From the NCBI RefSeq assembly GCF_000150275.1, contig NW_002060949.1, positions 457,861-521,860 on the forward strand: a DNA stretch of 64,000 nucleotides. Reading direction: 5' to 3'. The notes beneath the pieces are model-generated. The model did no database searches and was not told the origin of the DNA. It saw only the letters and a list, made by a program, of their open reading frames with translations. This stretch comes from Trichoplax adhaerens. Its lineage: Eukaryota; Animalia; Placozoa. A program made the translations under genes and the position numbers. Below, piece after piece: positions 27,347 to 64,000 of the stretch (its first letter is position 1; every line of letters begins with the position of its first letter).

Positions 27347-30300
27347 TTACACTCCATAAGAATTTGCAAGCCTTTCTTTTAAAGGTTGAGGAAACTGATT
27401 AGAAAAATTTCTCCAATTTTCTTCACCAACTTGCATCTTAAAGCCATGCAAAATCTAAAGCAAAAGCGTAATCTCTTTCAGGATACAATCACAAGAACGA
27501 CCGTGTATAATCAGAGTACAATCTACCTTATGAAATGTTTCCTTCAAATCTTCCTTCGGACTATGCCAGGATGCAACCGCATCGCAAAAATACATAAAAT
27601 CCTAATGCACCATAATCGTCATTATGAACAACGTAGTTTAACATGGTAGCTCATAACAGCTTACAGAGAATTTACCTGAACGACACCGCCAGGGTTAACA
27701 CTAATCATCCTACAAATACCACGAAATGCAGAATCTTTTTCTTCATTATCTCTAATGCATCTTAGTGCTTTACACCTTCAAAATATGGCAGGATCAAAGT
27801 ATAGTAAGTCTCTAACATTAAATTTTACTAAGTTAATTGATTAATAAAGATACACTACCATTTTTGAATGAAGTTTGGCAATTTAGGAGCAACTTCATGT
27901 GGACAAACATATCCTAATCGTCCAACCGTAATTGCTAATGTCCAACATTGAAGGATAACTTTTTAGAATAATATCAATCATATACAACATAAAAATATAA
28001 AACGAACCCGTATTTTCTAGTAAAGTTTTGGGTATGTCATCTCTATTAAGGATTTCAATCAGTTTATCTAACACTAAAGGCAAATAGGGTTGCACATCTG
28101 GACCTAAATAAAAAATGCGAACAATTAAATACTGCTGTAATCATATTTTTTGTACCCTAATGGTTTATAGATTTTTCTTTTCAGAAAAGTAGTACATACC
28201 CATTTGCATTGCCATCTCACCGATTGCCCATGCCGAATTATTGCAAACAGACACTAAATCCGGATTTAAATTTTTTCCAAGTAAAGGCATCATATCTCCT
28301 AAAATTAAAAAATACGATACGAATTTTTTTAAATGGTGTTTCAGTAAAATTGCCAAGAAATCTGAAACATACCAACATATTGTTGTACATGTCCGAAGCA
28401 TGCCTTCGTAAGATCACCAAGCAATGCAAATGAGCTCTGTCGTACTTCATCCGTTTGATCCTATATACATAACATAAAATTAATAAACCAATTAAGAAAC
28501 ATTTGTATCTATTAGCTACAGTATTAAACTCATTAGTCTAAAGAACCAACCTGCATGCACTGATATAGAAGTGCCAGCAAATTACTCTTTCCAATCAGTG
28601 AATCAATATTCTTATCAATTCCTTCCGTTAATCCACTCAGTAAATCTAAAGCAACTATCATGAAATCTTTGTCCGGTTGATCATACTGATCTATAGGTAT
28701 CTGAACTGTACTCTGACTTAAGGTCTGTTCCACCAGAGACACACATCGTTGAAATACTGGCTCCGCATACGGTAAGAACCCGGATTGAAGAGCTATAGCA
28801 ATTGATGACAAACACTAAAGCCAATGCAAATTATTAAATTGCCAAATTAATGCATCTTCGATTAATATAATTTTCATAAAAATGTTAATTGAATCCTACT
28901 TCAAGCAATGGGAATAAATCTCTATCTTGATCCTGTAAAGCATTCCACTTTTGTATTAACGGTGGCATCAACATAATAATTAATTCCTAGTCATAATAAC
29001 ATTAATAGATTTCAACATGAATACATGTATACTACGAAATTCTTCATTACTACATCAACTACGTACCGGTTTATTAAGATGATGTCCAACAGAGTCTGCA
29101 AGCGTACCAAAGGCATCATACAATATCAGAAGGTTTTTGCGCTAAACAAACGTATATTCACATTAGTAGTCAATAGCAATGGAACTATTCTTGAACAAAG
29201 TCTTATCTAACCTGATATTTGCTAAACGCAAAGACAAGCGTTTGAATAATATGCTCCAGATAAGGAACAAGAGCAGAGCAGGCTTCTTCTTCAAGGGTAG
29301 CAAATGCACTACATTTACGTAAAATGTATACGATGAACGATAACTCATAAGTGGTTATACTAAACGTGAAAGATTGTCTCAAAGATATCTGCAGTTTACC
29401 TGCAAGCAGCTTCTTGAACCCGCTTATTACTATCTAACAGACTCTTTAGTAACTAAAAATAATAAAATCCGTGAAAGATAATCCACCGTACTACAAGCAA
29501 AGACAAAATTAAAATCAAACCTCTCTTATCAGATCTTGAAAAAAGCTTTTCTCAGACTGATTTACAACCCAATGTGCGTAACGACTAAGTGTCCAACATG
29601 CAATTGAACGAACAGGAGCCTATCAAGGATATCATAAAATCTTTCAGTTTCAGCGCCGTCTAGTAACAAATAATAAAACCAACCTTATCATCGGATAATG
29701 ATTTTATTAGAAAAGGAATCAAGGTAGGCAAATGTTGATTCAGCCCTCTTAAACACCCTGCAGAAGTAACAGAAACAAGTTCTTGAATTGCGTCACTTAA
29801 AAATAGCAAATGTGCAGTTGTAACCTTCTGCAACAGCCCCAAGAACAAGAATGCCTGATTCTTTAACTACCCAATCACTATTGAACAATACTTCTTTCAG
29901 GATGGGTAGTAGCACTGGCAGAAGATCATTCCCAAAAACACTCGCTAAAATATCTAAAGCCGCAGCTGAGCACTTCCCTATATAGCAAGTTAGAAGAAAT
30001 AAACCATTTTCTCCGAGAAATTATATTACATGAATATATATATATATATATATAGACGAAATCTAATAAAGCAATTACTTAGGTTCCATTCAGATAACAT
30101 TTCGTCATCATCTGAGTCGTCATCATAATTATTATCTGTTGTGACGTCACCATAACCTTGGTTATCATCTATCCCATTTACGTGCTGATGACTCTGCAGC
30201 TTCGGTTTATGAAACCGTGGCTTAATATCTTCTTCCTTATCAGGAATTCCTTCATCATGTTCATCATCCTGCAATCAAATCTTTATTAATCTAATGCTAT

Positions 30301-31953
30301 ATTGTACAATATGCTAAAAAATATCAAATAACATGTTATCAATACGTAATTTTACAACCGTACCTTTAGTAGCATTACATCGATTTCTGAATACTTCATC
30401 CCACTTACAAGCACAGGAACTAAACTATTCATTAACATAATTTCCAAATTTCAGATATTACAGTTATGCTTGTTTGTTATTGCACACCTAAAACTTAGTC
30501 TTCAAAAACTAATAGGGTATACGCCTAACCTTGGCAAATAAGGGCGTAATGCTTCCTTACAAATAGACTGCTCAGCTATTATTAACCAAAATTCACAAGC
30601 TTCCAGTGCAACATTTCCATCTTCATCTTGTGTGCGAACCAGCATATACTAGCGCAATTTCGAAATACATTGTAAGGTTAGGTACAATAAAACTACTAAA
30701 AAATATTTACATTTTAACTTACCTCAATGATGCCATTAAGAAACGGCACCAATTGGCTTATTCGAATCCCTAATAAAGTCACCAAAGCATGACAAACATT
30801 TTTCCGAACTTCACCCGATTCATCGTTAGCAACAGAGAACAAATTCTGAAATGACATACGTACAATCAGGATGAACTTTTATTGAGTAAAGGTTCTTGAA
30901 TACCGTAAAGAACTAAATGTTTTCAAGCCAATTATTACACTCTAAATCAACTATATCTAACGAAAATACTCGAAAGAGTACATCGGAGAACATACCTGAA
31001 TTAAATCTTGAATATGCGGCAAAATCGTTGACGCTTGCATAAAGTGGCATATACATGCGACTGCTAATGATCTATAAAATACAGAATGTGTTTCATTAAT
31101 GCTAGTAATACTAAATATCAAGTTATATGTTTGCTACAGGTCGTAACTCTGGTAAATGCGATCCTTAAGCGGTATAGTAGAAAATCCACGAAACTTAATA
31201 CAAGTACTGTAATTGGATACCTAATTTTAGGACTGTAGTGTTTGATATATTGAATAAACTTTGGAATCATGAAATCCACTGGCAATCCAGATACAACATC
31301 GGCAACATCAGCAACATCTTCGCAAATGTTATGTAATGCAAGAAAGGCACCCTGCTCGTACAGAAAATACAGGCCGAACAATAAGCATAGCAGTCACATC
31401 GACAAGCGAAATTTCTTTTTGTAATTACTAAATTACATTACTGAAAGCAGGAGTAAATTCTTCGATACCTGATCCAAGCAAAATCAATCTGCTATCATTA
31501 CAGCTTATTGCTATTTTGCAATAGCTCCGATACAGTGAAACACGAAATGCTACAGTACGTATCCGACCTATCGTTCCTTATTATGCAATGCATTATAAAA
31601 AAATTCTATGGCAGGCCCTACACTTTCGATTCGATAAAGTGTACTAATAGTACAGTACATACGAGTATTCGAGTATAGTATTCAGTCCATAAAATTGAAA
31701 ATAATGATTGTGAACATTTATATACAAATAACAAGATCTATATTCGAAATCGCACAAACGTGATAACATTGCACTCATCTTTAAAGAGTAACTGAAATGC
31801 TTTACGAGCATATGCGTACATCGTAATCCAAGTCGGTCAATCGAGTGATAATGGCCCTTTTGATACAGGCATATTCAATAACATGAAATTAACTGAGTAT
31901 GAGGACTTTGCGAGTACTTGTGATGTTATACTGCACTATAATGTATACCGTCA

Positions 31954-31990
<37 letters not shown>

Positions 31991-34900
31991 CAATCTACTA
32001 AAACCGTGAAACGACCGTAATATTAAATGTCAAAAATCAAATTTTTCAGATGACTATGTGCATGTAGAACATCCATACAAGTTACAACAATCTAAAACAA
32101 TATAAGTATAACCCAAGATCTTTTCGAATCTACCATTGCATATGCTCGCACCGTAAATTTTATCAAGGAATAAAAATGAATTCTCATCTTGAGTACACGT
32201 ATCTCCCAAACGGTAACTGAATTACATTATAAACTAAAGATTACAATGCCTGTTTGAGGAACCAGTCAACCACTGTCGCTAAAAATTCTTCACGCGCAAA
32301 CTAAATAGTATTTGAAGATCAGTAAACCGACAAAGATAGAGATTAACTGAATGTAATTAAAAGACTGTGTATGAAATAACAGTTGCAGTTGTAAACTATA
32401 TTAGCCAGAACGTCAGCCAGTCCACCAAATGTGCACAGGTGATTAATGACTATAACTATAAGCTGTTAATAGTCCATACCAGTGGTATAGGTCGATCCGT
32501 GCCATAAAAAGCGGGATTTTTACATTTGCATCTATGAATACGCGTATATAGCACTCTACCACGTAGTACAGTAGTGCAATTAAGAAGGCAATCAACTGGT
32601 AGAGTTGAGGCAGCTTTATAAACCCTTAAGCAGTTCACGATGCATGCAGTGACACCTCAATGTAGTACAGTAAATTCAAGAATAATTTGTATAACGCCGC
32701 ATGGGATTGTACGATACTAAACTTACTGCATCAATATTAGACAATTCTATGCTAACATCCAGCTAACAAGCGTAACTGCTATAGAGTCGAATTTCGATTG
32801 ATAACACCAAAAATCTTTCAAATTATACTACTACGAGTATAGTGCTAAAATGAAACTTAAGTAGCTATTTTGGTTACTTAATTAAAGGGTTTGATTAACA
32901 TCATAAACCAACAACGCTTTCTCTCATTATTATTACTATGATGACTGAATGACACAACAAGTAAAATGAAGTATACAATATAATACATCTAAGTAACACT
33001 AAATAAATCATGCAACTAGGCAATAAAAGACAGTTCGCTGAATCGAACTCTTCTATTGAATTGTTAACATCCAAGAATAAACTCCCGATAAAGCGTTATT
33101 CGAAAAGTAGGTTCAATCTAATTAGCTATTACCATAACAGCTAAACTGAAATTTGTATCAAACCCTCACATCCAATTCGCACACCTTTCTACTTCTACGA
33201 TTGAAACTTCATTACTACCGCAGTGCACCATGAAATACTGTACTAACACCACGATAATACATTGCCAACAACGTATATCTCACCTCACAAGCCTCATAGT
33301 TTCCGCTGTCAACCAACTGAAAAAGTGCCGGTATTAGATCTTGCCACTCAGCAAACCCATCGTTTCGAGCAACTGCAGTTATCAAAATAGCAACTATTGC
33401 CCTAATCAAAGGCGAAGGGTCACCAATCGTATGCAGGCACTCATACTTTATCAGTTGCCTTACGTTCTCTGGAAATTTTTCATAATGTGATTTAACGTTG
33501 TTTTTAAGAATTAATCCAGCTAATGAACGAGTATGATCATCTATAACAGTAGAACGTATAAAAGATTTTTATTAGTTTTATTCTATTTATGCTTGTCGTT
33601 ATACTGCAATATTAGATTGTTGATACAAACATTACAGTTTCCATCTACGTATATATTTACTATATCGAGTGCTAAGAGTAATTAATCAACGTCGACACTG
33701 CTACTGAAGCTAACCTCTTCAAGCTAAGCTATATCAGATGCAGTGAAATGAGCAATTTTACGAATAACAATACCATAAATCATATAACTAACCTTCTGTT
33801 GTCATCTTAGTTAGTACAAATACCAAATAATTGTTGAAATCCGGATAACAACTTAAACTTTCTAATTTCTAATATTGCCGAATAATTGCAATTTGCATAC
33901 TTAGTTAAGAAATTTACATCAAAGCCTCCGTTACACTCTCAATTCTGATGCGAAACGTAAACAATAATTAGCAAAAAAGCGTCATATCATAAATTTAACC
34001 CAACTAGCTAGTAAATCAGGCAGTCAGGGCGATGCTGTCAAGAGAGAATGATCCTATCTTAAAAATACGCCTTTACGATTACGTAAGGTAACATAATCTT
34101 GATACGTTAGATACTGCGAAATAAGTAGAATTGCTACAGTACCTTGTACAGGGCAAGATCATCACATAAGAACTCACATTTAGCACAGTATAAACAAATT
34201 TGATGCGGGTATGAATAGTGAACCTTCTACTAATCAACTAGTGACGTGATAACGAGTGGTAAACTGGCATCAAAAAGATTTGATTATACTAGTTTATGAG
34301 ATTACTGTACACAACTCTTTGAGATTTTACGCAACAGTACTACCTTGCACATGGCAATCGTCCAATTAGTATACAGTATATATACATACATACATACATA
34401 CATACAAATATACTGTACTGATCCTTTTAGTCTTGTTAGCGATAAATTATAAGATACAGTTCGTACTTTTAATCCAACTCAATACTACAGTAAAATGCAC
34501 ACGTGCGGTTTAAACATGCATTGTCGCCTTTATACAGTACAGGAAGGAGCAAAACTATAATAACTTTTATGATTGAATCAAACTAAGATTTGGTGCCATA
34601 ATTCATGACTACAGTCTACTCAACAAGCAAACGTTACATCTCAATATTCCATAGAAAGATTTAAACTGTCGTACCTACAGTTTAAAACTTTCAATTGCTA
34701 GATTACAGAAATATGTGTGGTATCTTTTACGGATCATTAAAACTTAGAACGCAATGATGCAGTTAAAAGGTATCAAATTCTAAAGACTACAGTACTGTAC
34801 ATCCAAGCACAACGATCAATAGCAATCAGGTTGTTCAACATTGATTATAAATACTAGAATCAACAAGTAAAATTGCACGAACTATCCACTTTTTATCATT

Positions 34901-40360: not shown

Positions 40361-41015
40361 TATCACAAGCATACAAAAATACATTTATATTTATGATCGT
40401 ATAATTTGTTACTTTTCCTAAAATTAAATCATACCGGTCTACAACGAAATCTGTACCCGCAACACCTGCGTAATGTGCATATATACGAGGTATGCATAAT
40501 ACTCATATGAGGGAACGCAGTATGGCTATAACTATTGCCGGGCGTGGATTATGCAGAGAATGTATTAACATATCGCATTTACTTAATTTAACTACAGTGC
40601 CGAATCTTTATAAACCAATTACATATTCTTTATTGCATATTATTTTGACCAGACACATCAAATTTATTAATCTAACTATATAAACATACGCGAAAATCAG
40701 TGTCACATTACTCATATTACTAAAGTACCAATACAAGATTAATCCTAAGATCGCTGTTCCTAACGTCGGAAGAGACTGAATTGTAATAAAATTATGCGGC
40801 AATAAGTATTAAAATGTATATCACATTCTGTATTAATTACCCAACATTGGCATTAGCCCAATAATGCCATCAAAGAATCGGTACCGTGATTGAATGGCTG
40901 TGTACTGTATGGAATCTCCAATTATACGAGTACAATGTAACACCGCCTTTGAGTACTACTTATTCGTGACTGTAATTAAACATAATATTTAGGTGCTAGG
41001 TTTAAAGGCATCTGT

Positions 41016-44240
<3,225 letters not shown>

Positions 44241-44448
44241 GTTACCGAGCAAAGATTAGGTAGATTGATTTAATAATGGAGAAATTGTTTTTTAATTTCA
44301 GATCAGGAACAAGTTCTTTCAGGTCTCTTTAAAAGACAGAGGCAGAGTACGGTGCAGTACAGACAGTAAAGTAAAAGTACTTACTGAACTGTACATTGCT
44401 ATGGACCAGACCTTACAATACACTACAGCGACTACACCGTTGATTTTA

Positions 44449-46200: not shown

Positions 46201-49200
46201 CTATAAATTTGTGATTTTGTTATTGCCACTCTCTTTCGAATATCTCGTATTCTTGTTTACGTTATCATCATTTGGCGTGTATGACTGGAGAGTATAAAAG
46301 AAGTAGGTTAATGTTGTAAGTTTTATATGCCGATTAATAGTTATAAGGTTCTTATTAAACTAGGATTTACCGTACTATATATACATTGTGGTACACGTAT
46401 TTTTAGTGTAACGTTGTAAAACTAGAACTCTCTCACTTAATACACCTTGCAACGCTAATAAGGCACCCATGCAAAGACTTAAAATAGCTCCCGGTGCTGC
46501 TATTTATTATCTAACTGCTCACCGCATAAGGTCCCTTAGATTCATGAAAATTTTCTGTTGTATTTCTAGTTACGTAAGTTGCTTTATCATCCGTTCTCGC
46601 AGTATCATTAGGTGATGTCATACGTTTAGTACTGGCAAACTTAACAGTACCACTCGTTCCCAAGATTTGTGATTGCCAAAACTGAGAGCAGATATTGTGC
46701 ATCTAAATAAAAGAGCAAGAAATGATGTTACAGCCTTAGTAACGATAATACTGTGAGATAATTTCGGTTGTAAACGATCAAACATAGATGTACTTCTCGT
46801 ACAATGCTGTATTATAATATCAGATCTCAAAAAATGACAATCAAAATTACCGGTCCAGTAACCACAGTATAAAAGACAAATAAAAAGATTCCCTAAAAGA
46901 ATTAACAAATAATAATAATATTAAGCACTACTAATCAAATCACGACTTGAGCAAAATAATTTAGCTTTTTACCAAAATCGAATTCAGAATTAGATATAGA
47001 ACAGCCATAATGGTGGAAATTTCTCTCATATATAATATAGCAAAGGTCCATGTCATGATGAGCAAAATAATGCTTATAACGGATCCCTGGGCTATCGTTC
47101 TACATTTTTTTGTCAACACGATTTCAGAGAATAGCAAACTTATAATAGATCCTTTTTTAGGCCTGAACAAACACCACAATTCAGTATAATTATACAATTA
47201 TCAACCTGGGGCTCCCCGCATAATTCTCTTGTTCCGTTCTCCTCCTCATTGATACTTCATGCATTACGCGTGAGCACATAATAACGCTTACCTAAAAATT
47301 TTTAAAATGCCGAATATTAGGTATTGGATATTAGTTCTGTTACATGCAATAATTAGTAAACAGCAGATGCACTCATATTATTATGTAGCAACATACACAA
47401 AATACTTACTACAACAAGCAATAAAACTTCCCCAACAAACAACCAAAATGCTCCGCTACCAATCCTCAGCCAACAACTAAAAGTTATTTTTTAATTAAAA
47501 CATTTATATGCAGTATTTATAAACATTAACACATTCGTAGAGTTGCAAGTAAGCATAAAAAATTTTACTATCCATAGTTAGTGAATCCTCTTTGAAGTTA
47601 CTTTCACATCTCAAGATAATAGTGATAATGTTACTATCATATCAGACTAAACAAACAGAAACGTAGCAAACACGACATGTATATTCATGTCACACTACAA
47701 GTAAGAGATTAATTCTTAATTTAATAACATACAACTTATCCGTGCCAAAATTGTCTGAAGCGGCAAATCCAGCGATGACAACGGTAATTGCCGGAATAGC
47801 TATAAATTAGAACACCCCAAATGAGAATTCTTTTAGATATGAATGCTGCACACTTTAATATTTTGGTAGTATTAAACGCTTATAATTGATACATGCACTA
47901 CAGATAATCTAAATTTAGTTTCAGTATTTGTCATCTTACCGTAGGCGAATATGTAGCAAAATCTTTTCTTTAATTTTTCCATTATATGAAAAGTTCGACG
48001 ATAAATTTCGAAGCTGCTGATAAAGATCCAGAAAAACGTGCACAAAGAAAAGTAATTTATAGAAACTGCCATTGCCAGACAAACGTCCTAATTAAAACAG
48101 AATAAAACCCAAGTTTCCAGTCAAGAAGTCAAACCTCATAAAATTAAAGCTTACAGACTTAAAGATATGCAAAAATAAGATTTAAAAACGGGTTGTAACG
48201 TATTGTTAAGAAACTGTATATCGTTGTAGGATGATATTAAATTTATCCTTCATATATTAAAACTGGATTAGTAAAAATACTCTTCTGAAAATTACAAAAC
48301 TAAAATGTTATGATCATACCTTATTTTTGGTTTGATATATTGAAAATAGACAAAGTAACTCAAACACAAACAAGGTAAACAGGATGTTTAAACGAATATG
48401 GTTCATGAACGTATTTTGCGATCTGTAAAAACAAAATTTTTAGTTACATTTGAAAATCCAGCAAGTATTTCACGACAAAAGTAATAAAAAATAAAAAATA
48501 TAAAGCTTAACAAATGATTTAAAAATTCTTTATCAGAAAGTACAATCATACCGAAACGAAAATAGAATTAACAATGCCGTTACAATCGCACCAGTGGCTA
48601 TACTGCAACCGATAATAGTTATTTCCTTAAGATTTTGAGGAATCTAAGAAAGTGTAAATACGAATATATTCAATCATTTTATGAATGCTAAAGAAAAATC
48701 ACAACAGAATCCACGGTCACTCACTAAATTCTTTCGCATAGTCTCTATGACGGTAAAACTAGTAAGGTGATTGCATCGACAAGTGATATGGGTACTGTTA
48801 AATAATACCACTGAACAACCCCGATTATTCCATAATCCTTGAGCTTGCCTAATCAATGACAAAATATTTTTATTCTTACAATGAATTAAAATCTAATGTT
48901 GCATAGTTATAGGCTTACGAAGTTGAGAAATCCCAATAAACGCATTTTTTCTCCGCATCATCTCTGGTAGCCTAATCAAACAGTCAACAATCCTGTTAAT
49001 TCACGCTGTTAACTTGTTATGCAGGATTGGAAACGATATCTTATCAAAATCGAAAAAATTTTATAAGTAAATAATCCGAACTTCTGTATATTTGATAATG
49101 TAGATAATGGGATTTTCATTTAAGAACTTTAAAGATAAGGAAGGCTTCGTCGAAATAGAAACGATGGCACCCAAAATTTTTTGATCAACGGCAACACTTG

Positions 49201-52200
49201 TGTTATTTCTAATTTTATTATCACTGTTAAGAGAATTTATTATAACATTAATCGGTACTTCCAACCTACTTATTCGTCTTGATAATGCTGTTTCGGATAT
49301 ATTTTTACTTACATTCCAGGTATATATTCTGACAATAAATTAGATATCTGTTTGTAGGCTGCGTATGCAAGTTGTGATTCTATTAAAATACCAAGTAAGA
49401 AATTCCAGTTATTTCCGAGATGGCAGAATTTACACAAACTCACTTAGAAAGGGTTTAGGATAGTAAAAAATTTACAATAATCAAGAGTGACACACAGAAA
49501 ATTAATCTTTAATGCTAGCAATAACTACCTCCTGAAGTTGCCAACGCTAAAGGAAGATTAACCTTTAATGTGCTAGCAAAGCTAGCAGGATTAGTAGTAA
49601 CTGGAAATGTTACAGACATTGGAAGATTCACTCTCAACTTTGAACTTACAACAACTTGAAAATAAGAACAACAGCCATTAATACAGTTTTTAAGCATATA
49701 TTACACTCATAGCAGAATTTTCTATTAAATACGGATACTTTTCTAGAATTTATTACTCACCAATGTTCTTAGTAATTATGGTAATATTGGCTTCAGCAAC
49801 ATTACGCGTATTGTTAGTCCAGAGAAATGCAATGTTATCAATTACACGCATTAAATTTGTGGCCAGAGCCATTCTTTGTGCCTAGTGAAAGATTAGTAAT
49901 TTACAGGACATTAACAATATGCTCTAAGTTACAATCGATCAATACTTTGAATACATTATATTTTTATCAAAAGTCACTACATCCATTATCAAGTGATTAC
50001 CTTTTTAAGTCCCACCCATCCGTTATAGTGTAGAGGATCGATAAGGCTACTAGAGCTTTCAATTAGGTCCTACCCAATGAACGAAATTTGCAAACACGTA
50101 CGATAACATAGATTAGCGATTAGACTTTTGCTCAATGTTAATACTTCTTTTATAAACGCAATATTCTGAATTTGAATTGTATAACAACTGTTGATTGCAA
50201 CGCTAATAATTACTGATCTTAAGCTGTTCTACAATTAGAAATTTCACCTTCAAAAAATTGTTAATACTAGACTTTTCAGTTTTCCTGATTTCGTCCCTTT
50301 TTTTCGCTAATAATCGATTATATATTTCAATAGCTGTGACGATATCCCCTCCATAGACGGGTTGATTAAAACCTGTACTGAGTCTAAGTGAAGCCGCTAA
50401 AAGTGTGCTATTGGAATCTGGCCTATTAGCCTAAAATTAAAATTAAATTTTATCAAAAATGCCTAGCAGTTATGACAATTTAACAAAGCTTATTTCTACA
50501 TTCTGTTTACGCCTTAGTAAGGAAATACGGTAAATTATGTCTCAGAAATCAACATTGCACTAACTTGATTTTTAAGGCTAGTGAATCGTGCAGATTTGCA
50601 TTGGCTAAGATCAGGCCAGCTTTTTGACCAATAATCAGCTGATAGGCAATACCAGGTAGCCGTACCTTAGATAATTAATGTAGGAATATAACGTAAAAGA
50701 AGATAAATAAAGCTATTCATATTCTCTATTTATTTTTTCAAGATATTTAATTGGCTATTAAAGGCCGAAGGCTATCTTTAACTTAAAAAAAGATGCAATA
50801 TTATATAGAAATATCATTCTTATCTTTTATGAATGGTAATCTTACCTGTACTACCTGCAGGGCAGGGCTTAGAATTGATCTTTCCAATCAATGTTCTATC
50901 CCAACGGATGCCTAATACTAATGTAGAAGGGCACCACTGAGACGATATCGTACCTTCGGTTGGCGCGGAACTTTTAGTAGTTACTTGGGTCGTTATAGCG
51001 TTAGTGCTAGCAGTAGTAATAGTGGTTGCTGTTGTAACAGGTCTCACTGTAATACCTAAGTGTATAAGCAGCGTGCTTAGTCTGAAGAAATCTCTAAAAC
51101 CTCTTAGGATAAAAATTCTAGTTTAGCACTTTACCCTCGTAATAATATCTCTGCAAGAACTGATTCAATAATATAATAAATACTATCTCACTTACTCGAT
51201 ACATTAAGGGTCATGTGATAGCGTTGAGCATTCGATATGTTATTACTTGCAGTACATGTATACGTCGAGCTATCAATTAAGGATGTTTTAGGAATATAAA
51301 GATACGAAACTCGAACATAAAGTTTATGATAAGTTTGCCAGGAATAAATTGATGATGAATTTGTAATATCTCGGTTTTGCTTGCTCCAGGTAATATTAGG
51401 TATTGGTGAACCTGAGGCGAAACACCGAAGAAGGGCGGCTTCACCTTCTTTGATATTTAATTTGCTCGTGCTTTCACTAACTAGGATCTTTGGCGGCACT
51501 GAAGCAAATAAAAACATAATGCCAGTATTACTTATAATGAAGACTTTATTACATCAATGACAGCGTAAAATTACTTAATCAAGCCTTCCTAGTATAAATG
51601 GCGATTTATAGTAGGATATTAATAATAAATTGCTAACTAGCTACAGATATAACAGTGTTTAGATCTCACCTTTTGGACAAGCTCCATTAACAATGTCACA
51701 CGTAGCACCGTTTGGACAATCGCAAGTTAATTTACAGTGATCTCCATAGGTACCTGCTGTGCATGCTAGAATAATTTAGATAATATTATGAAATAAGTTC
51801 TGCGAAGAGCAAAATGATTGTAGCTATGTGATTACTTATTAAATAAAAAAACTAGCGGAATTGTATAGGCACTATTATACTGTCGTGGGATGTAGAATTT
51901 AAAATAGAATGAATAAAGAATTAAGACATACGATCAGTACAGTCATTTCCCTTCCAGCCAGTTACACAAGTACAACCACCAGGGCTTCTTGTGCACACTA
52001 CTTGACTGGTACATGATCCCTTTGGACATCTTTGATCACAATTATGTCCAAAATAACCTGCAGAGCAAGCTAAGATAAGAATGAGTGATTAGTTTCCGCT
52101 AATACGTACAATGGTAATGCACTACTCAAAAGAAAATAAAACGCTCAGGGCGCTAATTGTATGCATCCTATGTTTCGAAAAAATTCACAACAGCATTACA

Positions 52201-55200
52201 ATATACAGCGAGAACTCTAGAACTATAAAAATGCATCAAAATTTGTAAATTTTAGTCAACTACAAGTTTAAAACCTACTTATTTCGCAATTATCTCCAGC
52301 AAAGCCAGGACTGCAAATACATTTACCATTAGCTGCATCACAAATGCCACCATTAAAACACGTGCATGTGCCATTACAACGACCACGACTAGTTGAATAC
52401 GTCCCTGCTGAACAAGGTTGAATTACCAAATTTACCCAGGCATTTCGCTCGGCATTGCTTGATTCACATTTATACATTCCACTGTTAAAGGCATCGGCTG
52501 AACTGAAGACTATATCTTTCCCGTTATTTTGAATATTAATAGAACTGGAAGTCTGAACTTCTTTACCACGTCGAAACCACTTAAATGACCCACTTAAGGC
52601 AGTAACGATTTTTAGTGTCGTTCTTTCCTGAACTGCTCTAGCAACATACGGCCGGACAGGTTGAATATCTGTAGAAAGAATAAAAGACATACCGTAACGG
52701 TAGCAAACCTTATTGCATTACAGAGTATTCCTGCTACAGTGTAGCAGGAAATAAAAGATATCAAACATTATGTGCCATAAAGATATCCCTTTCAACAAAG
52801 CAAAAAAATAATAATTTGCAAAGTTCAATACCTCGATCCTTATTATAGATTGCGTTAGCATATGAGGTAGTAGCATTAGTTGAAGCAGTGCATCGATATG
52901 GCCCAGCTTTAGCACTATCAGATTTCAACCTAATCACTCTTTTAACAATACCATTTTCTTGTATTTGTGGCTGCACACTATACAAGCTGATGCCAGCATA
53001 ATCAGCATCCCATCGCCATTCTAGCGAGACTTTTTCTGGACCCTCAAAGAAACAAGTAAATTCTACTATGTCATTGAAGATGCCACTCGTATTATAGAAT
53101 ATGCCGAAATTGGTTGCATCTGGAATTGATAGCACAAAAGGAATCAATTTTAATCAAAAAAATCTTCGCAATAATATCATCTACTATAATTAATGAAGAT
53201 ACTGAGTAAAATTCTAAAATCTACCGTAAAGAAGTCTGTTAAGAATATCATAAAGATTCCAATTATAGTGCTGTCATATGTCTTTTTTTATAAGTAATGT
53301 GTAAATCGGAAATGTATCATCTACCATTATCAGTTGTAAAGCGTAAATTTGCTGTAAGTATTTCATATTAAGAATTTAAATGGCGCTACTAGCTTTCAGT
53401 CATGGCGAAATTTCAAGATTTGTAGTAAAGATGATAAAATATAGCATAGAAGTACAATCACTATTAACTAAAGTAGATTCAAAACTCATGAAAACAAAGT
53501 AAATAATACTTTGTATTATACATATTAGTTAATTTCACTCAAAGAGGATAAGCCCGGACAAATATATCGCCTCAAATATTCCACAATATGCAATAATAAT
53601 AAAAATTCATGCAGTCAATAATTATAATGAAATGCTTTAGTTGATGATAGATAGAAATAAAAAATGTAAATGGAACCACTTGGCCTCTAAAATCTTAATA
53701 AGAACGTTGATCAAATACAATTACAAGATCCTACAATCACACGCCGTGCTTGTACTGTATATTGCATATACAGTAGTGGTTCAAGGACTACTTTTACTGA
53801 AAAAACGATACTTTTTGAATGTAGAAGAAACCATTTAACTCTTTAAACTGATTTCCGTCAAAGCAAGGAAATATGTAGAACGATTACATGTCATCACCAA
53901 TTTAAAAAATTTGTACATATTGTCTAACATTGCATTTTTGTGTAAGTATACGTATGCAGGTATTTGATTTATTATGTTATTAACCAATATTATCATTCCA
54001 GTTTACGGTGTAAAAGCAGAGGTAGCGATTCTATATTATTTCAGTTCATTATAAGTACTAAAGACTTAAATTAAAAGATTGGCTACCGTTAGTGCTATTT
54101 TATGCTTGTTAAGCCTACTCCGAACCAAAGTTTGTTATTTTGAAATGGATAACTTAAGATATTCATTTATTCGAATCACCTAAATTCGCTCAATATAATC
54201 AGTTCCTACTCTTCAAACTATTATCGCCTATATAATTAATTAATCAACAGTCAAATCCACTAACAAGAACAATTCATGTTTGCTTTACAAATCAACTATC
54301 CAATAGTTCAATTAGCAAATCGTTGCGTATACGCGTTTTGTTAAAACACATTTCTAATTCTGATTAAAAGCTGTTTTAATGTTACTCCAAACTGTGGGCT
54401 TTGATAAATCGATAATGAACTAACCGAAATGAGAAGTGAAGACTATGTCAATGGGGAAAACTGGTGTTATCTGCGATCGTACGCGATTTAATGACTGAAT
54501 AGGCACAGCAATAGGAGGGTCATCTTAAATTAGTATTCTATTCAAAAAGCCTTGTTTAGCTATTTAACGCTATAATGAAAAACATTCACCATAATATATT
54601 TTCTATATTAGCAGTAATTTTACAGTATAACAAGATATATTGTAAAGATATGACATTTTCGATTAGTATGTGTATGAGCTATTACAAAAGTATCCCTCAA
54701 TCTCCTAGCATCACTAATACTCTTAGACTTTTTATTACAACACCATCGATACCATGTCGAGGCGAAGACTGTTCCTTCTACATTACTTGTTAACTAGGTT
54801 GATCTCCTCGAGAACTTTAAAGATCATATTTCATCGCACTAATTTTTCTTTTATTCAGGGACAAATTAAACAAAAATTGTAATTAATTCTAGTCATATTA
54901 ATCAGCGTTAGTTGAGCTTATTAAAATGAGAAGTAGAGTACGAAATAGATCGATAAAAAAAGTCATAATTCTAAAATACGAACTAGTAGTAATTGCACGA
55001 TTACTTCATGCGTTTAAAGTAAATAATATATTATTCATTCGATATGGCGTTTCTTACAATCCAGTATAAAATTATCGACGAAATACCAATACTAACTACA
55101 AGTGATGCATCATACAAAATAGCGCCAAAGCTTTCAATAATAAAACTCTAAGAAATATAAGATTGAAAATTAAAATAAGAGGACGCTGTAGCGTAACTAA

Positions 55201-55802
55201 TTCATCTCATCAATCATCGTGATATAGAAAAATCTGTACGGATACCTATAACATTAGGGTAATTCAATGTAATTGAATTAGCTAGATAGATAAAAAGGGA
55301 TAGTAGCAGCTAAAGATTAGGTGCGAGATTGACTAAAGAAAGGAACTTGACTGACTAACCAACAAATAATTGGGTAAATAAGATGATATTTACTTAATAT
55401 TAAAACATACATTAGGCCGGCATATTTTATCAATCATAAACCTAGTAATAAAGTTTAGGGAAATATTATCACTTAGTGATAGCTGAAAGAAACAAATTGT
55501 GAGATTTAGGTCTATAGTAAAGCTTGATTATAACCAATAAATGAAAGCGATTACATGCTGTCATCCGATATTTGCGATACTAGTAAAAATCGAATAACGA
55601 CAATGTTGGCCACACTCTAAGGCTATTTACATAAGATATCCCTTAAGCCTCGGCCAATAACTGTATTACGATGCGAAAAACGATAATACATACTCACTAT
55701 AACCACGTTATCAAAAATTCAATTTAAAATTGACTTACCAATTTGGATAGCTAAACAAAGTAATAAGGCAATAGAATGAATGAAATATGTCAACTTTCCC
55801 AT
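46201..55802 (-). CDS. Adhesion GPCR: signal peptide - Ig - Ig - 3x EGF - Ig - Thr-rich stalk - HRM - GAIN/GPS - 7TM - PDZ-binding tail
   Basis: Signal-peptide exon MGKLTYFIHSIALLLCLAIQI (55739-55802); Ig exons (~52834-53120, ~52430-52670, ~51195-51500); EGF exons; HRM WCPSTLVLGIRWDRT...KPCPAGSTGTATWYC...PDLSQC; GPS CVYWDF...GLWNNRGCSVV...ITCRCNHL/TSFTVI; all seven TM segments found in phase-compatible exons (CWLR in ECL2); C-terminus ...NNKITNL* (stop 46201-46203). Confidence 0.9.
52728..52750. repeat. Perfect 11-bp inverted repeat in an aGPCR intron
   Basis: ttcctgctaca-g-tgtagcaggaa; nearby taccgt-a-acggta (52690-52702). Confidence 0.7.
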
Positions 55803-60349: not shown

Positions 60350-63300
60350 TCAAAAAAGTGGCTTAGCGCCAGACTGTTCAAATTCAGTCCAAGCTTCATT
60401 TAATTCTACAAATATTGCCCTAGCCAATTTCTCATGTGGCTCTCCAACAACCTAAAGTCAAAGTTGCATCAATAAAACAAAATTTTCAATCGTTGAACAA
60501 ACGATGTCATTCCAAAACTTCCTTTACAGTTTTACCTTGTCCGGATGAATGCACAAGCACGCTTTTCGGTAGTATTTTTTAACCTAATCACATATTAAAG
60601 CATTTAAAGATTAGTTAAATGCTCAGTAAAGTCTTATCCAATCTTTTCTTTTATACTAACATTGTTCGATTCTATCACTTGGTGCATTCCTATTTCCTTC
60701 CATTTACAACCTTCCCAAACAGCAGTGTGTAAAGAGCAAAGTAGGGCCCGAATGTTACCCTTCTGTCCTCCCACCCAATCTTGAATCTAAAAATTACACT
60801 ATTACATTACTACCAAGTAAAATCCAATCAAAATGATCAATCAAAAACAACGAACTTTTAATTTAATAGGGTCAGTTGTCTTTTCGACTTCTTCTCGTCT
60901 CATTTCATTGATAGTTACGTGACCTTTGTCATGAGCCTTCGGTATAAATCCTTGAGCACCAAGTAAATCGCTGAACTCATTCTTAGCAACGTTTGGCTTG
61001 ACACCTAGAATTTCAGTTGATTTAAATTATATATTTATTGCTGAAATTAAAAGTTACTAAAATCATCATTATCCTTTACCGATAGAACCACGTAAGCCTC
61101 GTTCTTCCCTTGATCCAATAACATATGATGCTCTTTGTCCGGTAGGCAAATTTCCAATCGGTGATTTCTGTGTCGGTTTTTGAGCTGCCATTGGTTGCTT
61201 GTTGCCAATGTTGTTTGTTTGGTTCAGATTAAGATCAAATTTACCCTGTGCAAGTGACTCTAAATTACTTCGAAAACCTTGTTTCTTATTATCAGACTCC
61301 CTTTTCTGTGGCTTTATGATTGGTTGATTTGAAGTGCTACTTGGTTGCAATAGTTCTGGAGTACGGCGTTGATTTGTATCGCCCGTAGCTCCAAAAGGAT
61401 CAAAAATTATGCTTTCAGGACTATGAGTGCGTTGAGCTGATGGACTCGGGGCTCTTTGAGTTGCGAAGTCGAAGACATCTGGAGAATCCTTTGCCCTTGG
61501 AGATATGGATATCAAATCGTCCTTGCCAGAAACACTTTTATTATTATTTTGAGAAAACGGATCAAAAGCGTCTAGTTGAACAGCGCCAGTAGGGTTTGTT
61601 TCAGGTTTCTTTAAAGCATTATTACTAGCTTTAACAGTTGGTGCAAAAGGATCAAAAGAATCGGAGGAAACTGCTTTCGTAGGTAATTTGTTATCGAAAA
61701 AACTTGAAAAAGGGTCAGTAGGCGAGATCGGAGATTGATTTACTAACTCAGATATCCGATCAGCGCTCTTACTTCGATGCATCCCTTGAGACTTTTGACT
61801 TATCTCAAGATTGATCAAATTAACTTCAGAACTTGGAGATACGAGCTTTACTGGCGGGCTCTTCTGTAAGAATTTATCGTTAGAAACACTCTGATGTGAA
61901 GGAGCTGCTGTTACATTCGAAGAGCTAAAATCTAATAATGTATCCTCTGTCTTCGTAGTTTCCTGCTCGACATTTACGACGACTTTCGCTCGGTTTAAAA
62001 ATCTCTCCTCTGCTTCATCCGCGCGATTTACAGCGTCAGATGTTAAATCAAGGATATTTCCAGGATTGGAAGACGATTTACTCAATCCGCTAGTATCTCT
62101 AATAGCTGAAATTGAATCAGCACTTTGCTTTCGCTGTAATGCTTCTGTTCGAGCATTGTCCAATTTTTCTAACTTTTCATATGAAATAGTATCCATTTGG
62201 CCTTAATAAAAATATTAATATTAGCTGACATCAGTTAAGATCTGTTTATGCAGATATTCAATGATATCCTTACCATACTGTAAACGAATCGTTTCTAGCT
62301 CCTTCTTGGATGAGAGACATGGAAATAATATCACACGCTCCTGAAGATGAGTAGCATCTGGAGGCAGTATCGGATCGGGCTCATCATCACTATCATCATC
62401 CATATCTGTTGGACCCTGATGAGTTTTTAATACGCTCACAGCCAACTCTACATGAAATCCAGAAGGGTACTTATCGGGGTTGTCCTCATCTATATGATCC
62501 AGCTTTGATCTAAAACGAACAAATTATTTATGACTTTGTCAATATAACTTAAAAGGAAAATTTAATAAATAGATTAAAAACCTACATCGAAAACTTATAT
62601 CCTTTTGCCTCTGTTTCAACAAAGCTCGTATGAATTTGCAGTTGAAAAATTGGAAAAGATTGAATCTGAAAGACATAATTCTTATTTCTAAATTCTTCCT
62701 TATTATGCCAGTTGAGACTATTCTTAGATTACCTCTCTGTGTATTTTTGATGACAGCGTCGAGCGAGCGTGATAGACTGCTATCATTACGTCACCCCTAA
62801 CAAGAGTTCCTAATGGGAACATAATTTTGCCATCGCTACTATTGTAAACTCTAAAAATGTTGAAAGAACGTAGTATTATGTTTCCAACTACAGTTATTAA
62901 CCTTTATGAGTAATAACTACGATTGTAGCAAAATCATCGGACTATAAAGTAAAATCAATACCTCATCTCTTCTAAGGCATCCTGAAAAGTACACACCCGC
63001 CTCGTGTTGTTCTCAAAAACCTCAATATATGGCCGACACCCGATCCTAAATTAAAACAACGATTAGTACGGAAATGCAATCTTAATGGATAATTTTCATG
63101 GAGTACATACCGGGCTTTGTTGAACAATGGAACCGGAGTAATAGAAATGCTGTCTAATCGTACAGTATGCTCATGAAGACTGCTTTTTCCCTTGTTAACA
63201 ATTGTTGAAAAATACCTAAGGAACCTATGAAATAGTATGCGAAATAGAATTATTAGAAAAAATTTTGAAGACTCATCAATATAAATTAATGTCTAAAGAA

Positions 63301-64000
63301 CAGGTATCAACTTACCGACGTTGAGATGGAGAAATTTCAATAACATCTACATCCTGACTACGCTTTGCAAGAACCATCCGCAAAGTTGTTTCTCCGGTTT
63401 TAAAAAGACCGCAATAAACCAAATAACATGCTGTAACTAGGACAGAAGTACTTTTTCCATCCTATTGAGATCGTTGTCATCGTTTAGTGATATCGTAATT
63501 TCCAATATCTTAATCAAAAATTTTATTTCACCTTGCAATGAATAATAGCAACATTTTTACTGTCTTTACTCAGCCAACTATCAATAGCACGGCATACAGC
63601 AAATAGATGATTCAATGATAACAATCTTCTTGACGGTGTACAAAAATGTGTAACCTAGATTAGGTAAAATCGCGGTCAGTCCAGTACAAAAGTTAGATCA
63701 TACCAGAAATGGACTTAATAAGAATTATAACTTACGGCACTATTCAAGACAGTGGTATCATACATTTTCGGTGAAACATTGAACACGTGATAGCTTTGTG
63801 GATGTGACCTTTCAAGAAAGTTTCGAACTTCCTCGATTGGATTCTGCCTTGTTGATTCGTGACCACGGATAGATGGAAACGGCATAACTATAGCGTGCAA
63901 CATGGATGCAGTTATTTATATCAATATCAGATAAAGTTCTATGCTCTCAGTAGTAGTATTTAGACGTTAGGAATGTATTATGATCATATAACGAAGAAAA
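60350..64000 (-). CDS. GAK: Cyclin-G-associated kinase / auxilin (DNAJC6-like), 3' part: PTEN-like phosphatase, C2, clathrin/AP2-binding region, J domain
   Basis: IVMPFPS...RQNPIEEVRNFLERSHPQSYHVFNVS; IIHCKDGKSTS; SPSQRR; ITPVPLFNKAR.GCRPYIEV; FQLQIHT; DPF motifs and the LINLE clathrin box in exon 61069-62196; DWVGGQKGNIRALLCSLHTAVW...VKKYYRKACLCIHPDK...ELNEAWTEF. Stop TGA at 60350-60352; the 5' end, including any kinase domain, lies outside the window. Confidence 0.93.

What the first reader, a model, noticed from the sequence alone, without database searches (positions are those of the whole stretch)
51188..53147. Tie-receptor-like ectodomain (Ig-Ig-EGF-EGF-EGF-Ig) on an adhesion GPCR
Seen: after two Ig domains the spliced protein reads NAWVNLVIQPCSAGTY...CTCFNGGICDAANGKCICSPGFAGDNCEITCSAGYFGHNCDQRCPKGSCTSQVVCTRSPGGCTCVTGWKGNDCTDPCTAGTYGDHCKLTCDCPNGATCDIVNGAC, followed by a third Ig. 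Established: Tie1/Tie2 (TEK) ectodomains have the same Ig-Ig-EGF3-Ig order. From memory, the Tie2 second EGF (C.ERC....C...VFC...P.GCSC.TGWKG..C) has the same distinctive pattern. Here the module leads into HRM-GAIN-7TM instead of FN3 repeats and a kinase. I know of no vertebrate aGPCR with this architecture. Inference: a Tie-like ligand-binding head was shuffled between an RTK and a GPCR (these exons are phase 1-1), and it may sense fibrinogen-domain (angiopoietin-like) ligands.
Basis: partly seen in the sequence, partly recalled or inferred. Interest (0 to 1): 0.8.

Follow-up and report, generated by a model that had tools for sequence, protein, structure and literature searches.

The report
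Placozoan adhesion GPCR with Tie-type head
A Trichoplax gene appears to join the ligand-binding head known from Tie (angiopoietin) receptor kinases to an adhesion-type G-protein-coupled receptor, which suggests this head is an old, movable module that existed before animals had blood vessels.

Summary
On the minus strand, five phase 1-1 exons (53119-51196) encode Ig, Ig+EGF1, EGF2, a shortened EGF3 and Ig. About 150 bp downstream, exons follow for a Thr-rich stalk, HRM, GAIN/GPS (HL|T intact) and seven TM helices.

The Tie likeness is real, and it rests mainly on Ig2-EGF1 and EGF2:
- Human Tie2 is the best solved-structure match, in register, for the Ig2+EGF1 exon (2.8e-7) and the EGF2 exon (2.8e-8; next hit 0.019).
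- In 1.8 billion proteins, the 18 best single-stretch matches are all Tie-type heads or Ig-EGF receptor kinases of echinoderms, hemichordates, amphioxus and chelicerates.
- A Tie-EGF2 profile gives the exon 37.8 bits, against at most 15.4 for about 850 generic EGF alignments.
- The folded exon matches Tie2 best.

EGF1, EGF3, Ig1 and Ig3 are generic.

The head also sits on kinases, phosphatases and one sea-cucumber adhesion GPCR, so this is a new variant of a known kind.

The proposed angiopoietin-like ligand gets no support: no canonical fibrinogen domain was detected in this genome. I found no transcript evidence.

The parts
55739..55802 (-). Candidate first coding exon: Met plus a 21-residue hydrophobic signal peptide, GTAAGT donor, phase 1 (inferred)
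   Evidence: A scan for ATG...GT phase-1 exons with a hydrophobic core upstream of Ig1 gave this as the only good candidate. No transcript evidence.
52832..53119 (-). Ig1 exon (phase 1-1), a canonical Cys-Trp-Cys Ig domain, generic
   Evidence: Splice sites. Pfam Ig_3 0.0056 and I-set 0.04. Best solved structure is MuSK Ig1 at 0.0017.
52279..52668 (-). Ig2 + EGF1 exon (phase 1-1). Ig2 lacks the B-strand Cys and runs straight into EGF1, as in Tie heads
   Evidence: Tie2 is the top solved structure at 2.8e-7, query 61-128 = Tie2 163-230. Full-length match to a starfish Tie-type head, 65.7 bits, E 4.5e-13 in 1.8 billion proteins. Tie-head profile 96.3 bits, aligned to the Ig2+EGF1 columns end to end. 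The AF2 model (pLDDT 92) has Tie2 4K0V/2GY5 as its top Foldseek hits over about 132-139 columns.
51932..52069 (-). EGF2 exon (phase 1-1): the atypical Tie-type second EGF
   Evidence: Tie2 EGF2 (233-277) at 2.8e-8, next hit DLL4 at 0.019. Tie-EGF2 sub-profile 37.8 bits, against at most 15.4 for about 850 generic EGF alignments.
51670..51765 (-). EGF3 exon (phase 1-1), shortened: six Cys, last sub-loop missing
   Evidence: Tie2 EGF3 (280-307) is second in PDB at 0.06. It aligns to the first 31 columns of EGF3 in the Tie-head profile. Generic by score.
51196..51498 (-). Ig3 exon (phase 1-1), a typical I-set Ig domain
   Evidence: Pfam Ig_3 4e-16 and I-set 1.5e-13. Best solved structures are DSCAM, titin and Robo.
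50846..51046 (-). Thr-rich stalk plus first half of HRM (acceptor 51046 or 51055)
   Evidence: Pfam HRM 0.0045 on this exon alone. Splice sites.
50561..50665 (-). Second half of HRM
   Evidence: Read from the sequence: W..C....W......C pattern. Splice sites. No Pfam hit for this 32-residue piece.
48919..50417 (-). Five GAIN-domain exons (50417-50248, 49881-49761, 49654-49529, 49287-49082, 48961-48919)
   Evidence: Pfam GAIN 0.0017 on the first exon. The others have no Pfam hit when taken alone. Splice sites.
48725..48843 (-). GPS exon with the C-x-C-N-H-L|T-S-F site and a T-S-F-T-V-I tethered-agonist start
   Evidence: Pfam GPS 2e-11, 44.7 bits, above the 22.5 cut-off.
46850..48625 (-). Seven-transmembrane exons TM1 to TM7
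   Evidence: Pfam 7tm_2 7.5e-4 on the TM3 exon. The TM6 exon matches only adhesion GPCRs in PDB (ADGRL3 0.0022). For the TM3 exon the best hits are adhesion GPCRs (ADGRD1 0.16), with three TetR regulators at E 1.5 further down.
46512..46702 (-). C-terminal tail exon ending at a TAG stop
   Evidence: Read. Inferred.

Best explanation
This is one single-copy gene of a placozoan, very probably Trichoplax adhaerens. It lies on the minus strand from about 55.8 to 46.5 kb of the window, has about 22 exons, and should encode a receptor of about 1,080 residues.

The N-terminal head is Ig1-Ig2-EGF1-EGF2-short EGF3-Ig3 and is homologous to the ligand-binding head of Tie receptor tyrosine kinases. Here the head is not followed by FN3 repeats and a kinase. 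It is followed by a Thr-rich (probably O-glycosylated) stalk, an HRM domain, a GAIN domain with an intact HL|T self-cleavage site, and a seven-helix adhesion-GPCR core.

Shown: the exons, their phases, the domain identities, and the specific Tie-type similarity of Ig2-EGF1 and EGF2.

Inferred from the adhesion-GPCR family:
- The receptor self-cleaves at the GPS.
- The head binds a protein partner on another cell or in the matrix.
- Binding or pulling exposes the tethered agonist (T-S-F-T-V-I...), which switches on the 7TM core and a G protein.

Also inferred: the head was joined to this chassis by exon shuffling of phase 1-1 modules. The same head has been moved onto kinases, phosphatases and at least one other adhesion GPCR in deuterostome invertebrates. 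The ligand is unknown and is probably not a canonical angiopoietin.
For: - Gene structure: all head exons are phase 1-1 with GT-AG sites. Ig3 is about 150 bp from the stalk/HRM exon, which has no start codon of its own.
- Adhesion-GPCR core: GPS 2e-11, GAIN 0.0017, HRM 0.0045, 7tm_2 7.5e-4. Adhesion GPCRs are the best PDB matches for both TM exons tested.
- Solved structures: Tie2 is first for two exons, each aligned to its own Tie2 domain. EGF3 aligns to Tie2 EGF3.
- Large library: the 18 best single-stretch matches of the Ig2+EGF1 exon are Tie-type heads or related Ig-EGF receptor kinases. Most of those whose names I looked up are called Tie-1, Tie-2 or angiopoietin-1-receptor-like by their sources. 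Generic Ig or EGF domains reach at most 33.7 bits, against 65.7.
- The intermediate family is itself clearly Tie: a hemichordate head matches Tie2 at 3.6e-33, and the next hit is 1.4e-6.
- Profile of 15 Tie-type heads: the three exons align collinearly to Ig2+EGF1, EGF2 and EGF3 (96.3, 28.9 and 16.9 bits). The EGF2 sub-profile separates the exon (37.8 bits) from generic EGFs (15.4 bits or less).
- Fold: the AF2 model of the Ig2+EGF1 exon (pLDDT 92.4) has Tie2 as its two best Foldseek hits. These are among the only hits (three Tie2 entries) that cover both domains.
- Introns: the EGF1|EGF2 and EGF2|EGF3 introns match a starfish Tie-2-like gene exactly in position and phase, and the Ig1|Ig2 intron matches within one residue.
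- Precedent: a holothurian adhesion GPCR carries a Tie-type head.
- Copy number: no paralogue of the head or of the 7TM exons exists in the genome.
Against: - No transcript or annotated protein for this gene could be retrieved. No near-identical protein turned up in either protein library.
- Identity to Tie heads is only about 25-40%.
- EGF1, EGF3, Ig1 and Ig3 are generic. Trichoplax MEGF-type EGF arrays also score well on the EGF1 and EGF3 columns.
- The Ig2 part alone is only 3.5 bits above the best generic Ig domain.
- EGF3 is shortened.
- The profile members were chosen by similarity to the Ig2+EGF1 exon. That part of the test is therefore not independent, although the EGF2 and EGF3 results are.
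- The AF2 alignment consisted of Tie-type heads, and Tie2 was in AF2's training set. The fold match is supportive but not independent.
- HRM and 7tm_2 scores per exon lie just below Pfam's cut-offs.
Confidence: 0.7

Rival explanations
1. The resemblance to Tie is generic. The head is an ordinary IgSF/MEGF-type Ig and EGF array, and its order and patterns resemble Tie by chance or convergence.
For: By summed score, the top hits in the large library are giant multi-Ig and multi-EGF proteins. EGF1 and EGF3 do not stand out from generic EGFs: 49.6 against 49.5 bits for EGF1, and 87 controls score above EGF3. Ig1 and Ig3 match MuSK, DSCAM and titin rather than Tie. A Trichoplax MEGF-like ORF scores 72.5 bits across the EGF1-3 columns.
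Against: The EGF2 exon is 22 bits above every generic EGF on the Tie-EGF2 profile. In PDB it matches Tie2 EGF2 at 2.8e-8, with the next hit at 0.019. All the best contiguous Ig2+EGF1 alignments are Tie-type heads. The exons are collinear with the profile. The Ig2-to-EGF1 junction has the same spacing and Ig2 lacks the B-strand Cys, as in the family. Tie2 is the top fold hit covering both domains.
Confidence: 0.15
2. There are two genes: a secreted Ig/EGF protein ending after Ig3, and a separate HRM-GAIN-7TM receptor. The single-gene model would then be an artefact of reading exons in a row.
For: There is no transcript evidence, and no database protein joins the two halves for this species. Reading through the Ig3 donor meets a stop after three codons, so a secreted isoform is formally possible.
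Against: Only about 150 bp separate the Ig3 exon from the stalk/HRM exon, which is a normal intron length for this gene. Both junctions are phase 1. The stalk/HRM exon has no Met or signal peptide and begins in the middle of an open frame. The strand and exon spacing are uniform from 53.1 to 46.5 kb. A holothurian gene encodes the same kind of fusion.
Confidence: 0.1
3. One reading: the head senses a fibrinogen-domain, angiopoietin-like ligand, as Tie2 does through the tip of Ig2.
For: The head is homologous to the Tie2 head. In amphioxus, Tie-type heads occur in the same proteins as fibrinogen C domains (PF00147), which hints at an old link. Placozoans have about 30 divergent intelectin-like FReD proteins (PMC6321704).
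Against: Pfam Fibrinogen_C finds nothing in this genome even at E 10, while the same tool finds six HRM domains. No angiopoietin-like (coiled-coil plus FReD) gene is reported for placozoans. The Ig2 part is the least Tie-specific of the diagnostic segments. Tie1 has the same head, and from my own knowledge it is an orphan receptor with no direct ligand known. Having the head therefore does not imply angiopoietin binding.
Confidence: 0.1

Closest known systems
Tie2/TEK ligand-binding head (PDB 2GY5, 2GY7, 4K0V)
   Same: The order Ig-Ig-EGF-EGF-EGF-Ig is the same. The Ig2 G strand runs directly into EGF1. There is an atypical second EGF. Each exon aligns to its own Tie2 domain. The folded Ig2+EGF1 exon superposes best on Tie2.
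   Different: Identity is about 22-30%. EGF3 lacks its last sub-loop. Ig3 is followed by a Thr-rich stalk, HRM, GAIN and 7TM rather than three FN3 domains, one TM helix and a tyrosine kinase. No angiopoietin-like gene is detectable in the genome.
Invertebrate Tie-type heads on kinases and phosphatases, e.g. Patiria miniata 'Tie-2-like' XP_038066573.1 and 'receptor-type tyrosine-protein phosphatase T-like' XP_038056405.1
   Same: These are the closest sequence relatives of the Ig2+EGF1 exon, at up to 40% identity over all 129 residues. Head exons are phase 1 and share the EGF1|EGF2 and EGF2|EGF3 intron positions.
   Different: They carry FN3 repeats and a kinase or two phosphatase domains. They have an extra intron between Ig2 and EGF1, a full EGF3 and often a fourth EGF. 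All of them are bilaterian.
Holothuria leucospilota protein named 'Adhesion G-protein coupled receptor G4' by its source (P0236, 1274 aa)
   Same: A Tie-type head (Ig-Ig-EGF-Ig) is joined to a GPS motif and a 7tm_2 core in one predicted protein.
   Different: It has four EGFs and no HRM. Its 7TM is only weakly similar to the Trichoplax exons (10 and 4 bits), which match ADGRL3 better. The two fusions are therefore probably independent.
Vertebrate ADGRA receptors (GPR123/124/125)
   Same: From my own knowledge: an Ig domain lies directly before the HRM-GAIN-7TM core.
   Different: ADGRA heads are leucine-rich repeats plus one Ig. They have no EGFs and no Tie-type module. I made no sequence comparison here beyond PDB searches, which did not return ADGRA.
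MEGF10/11, SCARF1/2 and PEAR1-type EGF arrays
   Same: EGF1 and EGF3 are of this eight-Cys, roughly 43-residue repeat type, and score like them.
   Different: Those proteins have no Ig2-EGF1 junction and no Tie-type EGF2. SCARF1 (8HNA) scores 7e-4 for the Ig2+EGF1 exon and does not appear at all for the EGF2 exon.

Membership tests
Tie-type ectodomain head | Domain order Ig1-Ig2-EGF1-EGF2-EGF3-Ig3 | tested here: met
   Exon translations and Pfam per exon.
Tie-type ectodomain head | Contiguous Ig2+EGF1 unit, with the G strand (L-I/V-V-x-x) leading straight into the first Cys of EGF1, and best matches to Tie heads | tested here: met
   Tie2 is first in PDB, in register. The 18 best single-stretch hits in 1.8 billion proteins are Tie-type heads or related Ig-EGF receptor kinases. 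The alignment to the profile has no gap at the junction. The Ig2 part alone is only marginally above generic Ig domains (30.6 against 27.1 bits).
Tie-type ectodomain head | Atypical second EGF (C..RC....C.....C...P.GC.C..G.KG..C type) | tested here: met
   Tie2 EGF2 at 2.8e-8, next hit 0.019. Sub-profile 37.8 bits, against 15.4 or less for generic EGFs.
Tie-type ectodomain head | Complete third EGF with eight Cys | tested here: not met
   The exon ends after the sixth Cys and matches only the first 31 of 45 profile columns. There is no coding remnant in the next intron.
Tie-type ectodomain head | Ig2 and EGF1 packed as in the Tie2 crystal structure | tested here: met
   AF2 model with pLDDT 92.4. 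Foldseek top hits are 4K0V and 2GY5 (TMq 0.65-0.67, 132-139 columns), while non-Tie2 hits cover only the Ig domain. This is not independent of the Tie-rich alignment used for the fold.
Tie-type ectodomain head | Binds an angiopoietin (fibrinogen-domain) ligand at the tip of Ig2 | not testable with these tools
   No canonical Fibrinogen_C domain in the genome (with control). The binding residues were not compared.
Tie receptor tyrosine kinase family | FN3 repeats, a single TM helix and a cytoplasmic tyrosine kinase after the head | tested here: not met
   The head is followed by HRM, GAIN/GPS and 7TM exons. No second copy of the head exists elsewhere in the genome that could belong to a kinase.
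Adhesion GPCR (class B2) | GAIN domain ending in a GPS motif with the HL|T cleavage site, directly before TM1 | tested here: met
   Pfam GPS 2e-11, above cut-off. GAIN start 0.0017. The C-x-C-N-H-L-T-S-F site was read.
Adhesion GPCR (class B2) | Secretin-like seven-helix core (7tm_2) | tested here: inconclusive
   The core is split over eight small exons. The TM3 exon alone gives 19.3 bits, against the 20.6 cut-off. Adhesion GPCRs are the best PDB matches for the TM3 and TM6 exons, with E from 0.0022 to 0.2. The joined core was not scored.
Adhesion GPCR (class B2) | Head and 7TM core on one polypeptide | not testable with these tools
   Inferred from the intron length (about 150 bp), the matching phases and the lack of a start codon in the HRM exon. 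No transcript was found.
ADGRA subfamily (GPR124/125) | Leucine-rich repeats before the Ig-HRM unit | tested here: not met
   No exon gives an LRR hit. The head exons are Ig and EGF only.

The most novel reading that the evidence does not exclude
The Tie-type head is a pre-bilaterian ligand-binding cassette that existed in the common ancestor of placozoans and bilaterians, long before endothelium. It was first used on non-kinase chassis such as adhesion GPCRs. The angiopoietin-Tie kinase pairing would then be a later co-option. On this reading the placozoan receptor would point to the ancestral ligand class of the head, possibly an intelectin-like FReD protein or a cell-surface partner.
Probability: 0.2. 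Interest if true: 0.75.

Novelty: new variant of a known kind. Interest (0 to 1): 0.55.

Why it matters
Tie receptors are studied almost only as vertebrate vascular kinases. This gene, together with the echinoderm, hemichordate, amphioxus and chelicerate proteins found here, shows that their ligand-binding head is a free-standing exon-shuffled module. It has been attached to kinases, phosphatases and adhesion GPCRs, and it is probably older than Bilateria.

That opens a direct route to asking what the head recognised before angiopoietins and blood vessels existed. Trichoplax has few cell types and only one copy of the gene. It is also a clean example of how adhesion GPCRs gain new inputs by head exchange.

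It is not a new kind of system. Head swapping on the GAIN-7TM chassis is the rule in this receptor class, and other notes of this scan report it as common in this genome.

Tried and rejected
- Every search used single exons by reference. The whole head could therefore not be folded against 2GY5, and the 7TM core could not be scored as one piece.
- Search for this species' own protein or a transcript fragment: the 1.8-billion-protein search with the Ig2+EGF1 exon returned nothing above 48% identity. The word-indexed search returned nothing at all. The contig look-up tool states that records of the window's own genome may be left out; if that also applies to the protein libraries, this is not evidence that the exon is unannotated.
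- Ranking by whole-protein score is misleading, because giant titin-like and MEGF-like proteins win by summing many repeats. I re-ranked by best single stretch.
- Paralogues: searches of the genome with the head and 7TM exons found none. The gene is not part of a tandem array.
- Fibrinogen C domain in the genome: none, even at E 10.
- Literature: searches on adhesion GPCRs in placozoans, Tie evolution and placozoan FReDs found no description of a Tie-type head on an adhesion GPCR. They also gave no clear statement on how old the Tie head is. Two searches failed on term syntax.
- The HRM first-half exon against PDB: no hit.
- No co-folding with a candidate ligand was run, because I do not claim a specific partner.
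- No contig taken for human was handled. Human Tie2 appears only as a PDB match.

Full report
**What is there**

The window is AT-rich (about 33% G+C). It belongs to a 105.6-Mb assembly of 1,414 contigs. Size, composition and short introns point to Trichoplax adhaerens. That is my inference, and other notes of this scan on the same genome reached the same conclusion.

The finding lies on the minus strand. Stop-free segments and GT-AG sites give five head exons:
- Ig1, 53119-52832
- Ig2+EGF1, 52668-52279
- EGF2, 52069-51932
- EGF3, 51765-51670
- Ig3, 51498-51196

All junctions are phase 1. One correction is needed. EGF3 stops after its sixth Cys and passes straight into Ig3, and the intervening 171-bp intron holds nothing coding. 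A plausible signal-peptide exon with a GTAAGT donor in phase 1 lies at 55802-55739. The plus strand holds only a 59-aa antisense ORF.

**The rest of the gene**

About 150 bp after Ig3 comes an exon that encodes a Thr-rich stretch and the first half of an HRM domain (Pfam 0.0045). It is followed by:
- the second HRM half;
- five GAIN exons (first one 0.0017);
- a GPS exon (2e-11, above Pfam's cut-off) with the C-x-C-N-H-L-T-S-F site;
- eight small exons for seven TM helices;
- a tail exon ending at about 46512.

The TM3 exon alone scores 19.3 bits on 7tm_2, against a cut-off of 20.6. The best PDB matches for both the TM3 and TM6 exons are adhesion GPCRs: ADGRL3 at 0.0022 for TM6 and ADGRD1 at 0.16 for TM3. 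TM3 also has three TetR regulators further down at E 1.5.

Every search and the one fold used single exons by reference. The whole-head fold and a whole-core 7tm_2 score are therefore missing.

**Is the head Tie-like or merely EGF-rich?**

Against all solved structures, human Tie2 (2GY5, 4K0V) is the top hit for two exons:
- The Ig2+EGF1 exon scores 2.8e-7, with query 61-128 aligned to Tie2 163-230.
- The EGF2 exon scores 2.8e-8 and aligns best to Tie2's own EGF2 (233-277). The next protein is DLL4 at 0.019.

SCARF1 and other MEGF-like entries score far worse or do not appear. The EGF3 exon aligns to Tie2 EGF3 at 0.06, in second place. Ig1 and Ig3 are generic, matching MuSK, DSCAM and titin.

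**The large protein library**

In the 1.8-billion-protein library, whole-protein scores are dominated by giant multi-Ig and multi-EGF proteins that add up many repeats. Ranked by best single stretch, the first 18 proteins are all Tie-type heads or related Ig-EGF receptor kinases. They reach 65.7 bits and 40% identity over all 129 residues, with E 4.5e-13 for the whole library. Generic Ig or EGF domains stop at 33.7 bits.

Most of the source names I looked up are 'Tie-1-like', 'Tie-2-like' or 'angiopoietin-1 receptor-like'. The species are starfish, crinoids, sea cucumbers, an acorn worm, amphioxus, a spider and a sea spider.

This intermediate family is unquestionably Tie. A hemichordate head fragment matches Tie2 at 3.6e-33 from the end of Ig1 through EGF2, and the next hit is 1.4e-6.

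**A profile test with controls**

I aligned 15 of these heads, built a profile and scored each exon separately. The exons map collinearly:
- Ig2+EGF1 to columns 99-229, 96.3 bits
- EGF2 to columns 231-278, 28.9 bits
- EGF3 to columns 281-311, 16.9 bits

Sub-profiles were then run against about 850-1,900 control domain alignments. The controls were other Trichoplax EGF exons and all non-family hits. The results show where the signal lies:
- EGF2: 37.8 bits, against at most 15.4 for any generic EGF.
- Ig2: 30.6 bits, against 27.1 for the best generic Ig. This is first, but only just.
- EGF1: 49.6 against 49.5 bits, not diagnostic.
- EGF3: not diagnostic, with 87 controls scoring higher.

The family members were picked by similarity to the Ig2+EGF1 exon, so only the EGF2 and EGF3 results are independent. 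By reading the alignment, Ig2 also shares the family's missing B-strand Cys and the ungapped L-I/V-V-x-x-C junction into EGF1.

**Fold**

An AlphaFold2 model of the Ig2+EGF1 exon, made with 17 family sequences, has mean pLDDT 92.4. In Foldseek against the PDB, the two best hits are Tie2 (4K0V at 1.2e-7 and 2GY5 at 5.7e-7, TMq 0.65-0.67). Only Tie2 entries (these two, plus 9LV4 at rank 43) align over about 132-139 columns, covering both domains. All other hits cover only the Ig domain. This agrees with the sequence evidence but is not independent of it.

**Shuffling**

I mapped a starfish Tie-2-like protein onto its own gene. All its head introns are phase 1. The EGF1|EGF2 and EGF2|EGF3 introns sit in the codon just before the first Cys, exactly as in Trichoplax. 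The Ig1|Ig2 intron agrees within one residue. The starfish gene has an extra intron between Ig2 and EGF1. One-module phase-1 exons are common in EGF proteins, so this fits shuffling without proving it.

A search with the starfish head shows how mobile the module is in deuterostome invertebrates. It occurs on many tyrosine kinases and on receptor tyrosine phosphatases. It occurs with C-type lectin, HYR, F5/8-C, SAM and ZP domains. In amphioxus it occurs together with fibrinogen C domains.

It also occurs on one adhesion GPCR, a 1,274-residue Holothuria protein. That protein has Ig-Ig-EGF4-Ig, GPS (2.9e-14) and 7tm_2 (2e-37), and no HRM. Its gene has evenly spaced introns. Its 7TM is only weakly similar to the Trichoplax exons. 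The two fusions therefore look independent.

**One gene or two?**

I found no transcript or annotated protein.

The structural argument for one gene is strong:
- The intron between Ig3 and the stalk/HRM exon is about 150 bp, which is normal for this gene.
- The phases match.
- The HRM exon has no start codon or signal peptide.
- Strand and exon spacing are uniform.

I put about 85-90% on a single gene.

**Ligand**

Pfam Fibrinogen_C finds nothing in the genome even at E 10. The same tool finds six HRM domains, which serves as a positive control. Kamm et al. 2019 (PMC6321704) report only divergent, short intelectin-like FReDs in placozoans and no angiopoietin-like gene. The ligand remains unknown.

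**Context and verdict**

The head and the 7TM exons are single-copy in the genome. This is an isolated, intact gene and not a member of the lectin-headed or FCGBP-headed receptor arrays that other notes of this scan report for this genome.

My literature searches found no description of a Tie-type head on an adhesion GPCR.

The most likely mechanism is that of the class. The receptor self-cleaves at HL|T. The head engages a partner on another cell or in the matrix. This exposes the T-S-F-T-V-I tethered agonist, which activates the 7TM core and a G protein. All of these steps are inferred.

I rate it as a new variant of a known kind. It is of moderate interest, mainly because it suggests the Tie head is older than Bilateria and because it offers a simple animal in which to look for the head's original partner.

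Noticed in passing
Proteins P0084, P0099, P0086, P0140, P0187, P0194 and others: Echinoderm receptor-type tyrosine phosphatases carry one or two complete Tie-type heads (Ig-Ig-EGF3) in front of FN3 repeats and two phosphatase domains. The same ligand-binding head therefore sits on both a kinase and a phosphatase in one animal.
   Followed up: partly
Proteins P0188, P0239, P0250, P0257, P0262: Amphioxus proteins combine a Tie-type head with a fibrinogen C domain (PF00147) in one predicted polypeptide. That would put receptor-like and ligand-like modules together. I did not check whether these are gene-model fusions.
   Followed up: no
Protein P0236, locus L023:12066-39871: A Holothuria leucospilota gene that its source names ADGRG4 encodes Ig-Ig-EGF4-Ig with a clear Tie-type head, then GPS and 7tm_2 with no HRM. 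The Tie-type head does not show in the source's name for it.
   Followed up: partly
window 52466-52468 (-), residue 67 of the Ig2+EGF1 exon: Ig2 has a single F-strand Cys (Y-K-C) with no B-strand partner, which makes the Cys count of this exon odd (nine). Several Tie-type heads share this lone Cys (Y-E-C). It may be free or may pair with another domain.
   Followed up: no
window 53120-55738 (-): If the signal-peptide exon at 55802-55739 is right, the first intron is about 2.6 kb, roughly ten times the length of the other introns of the gene. I did not examine its content.
   Followed up: no
window 60637-63946, 41000-44255 and 27900-33568 (all -): By reading the translations only, the neighbouring genes look like a GAK/auxilin-like protein, phenylalanyl-tRNA synthetase alpha and a transportin/importin-beta-like protein. 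All are on the same strand as the receptor gene.
   Followed up: no
G000:C1387:376957-377487 (locus L013) and G000:C1409:3935081-3937343 (loci L004, L007, L010-L012): These are Trichoplax MEGF-type EGF arrays. One is a 388-aa single open frame that starts with an LDL-receptor-A-like Cys pattern. I used them here as generic-EGF controls. They score well on the Tie EGF1 and EGF3 columns but not on EGF2.
   Followed up: partly
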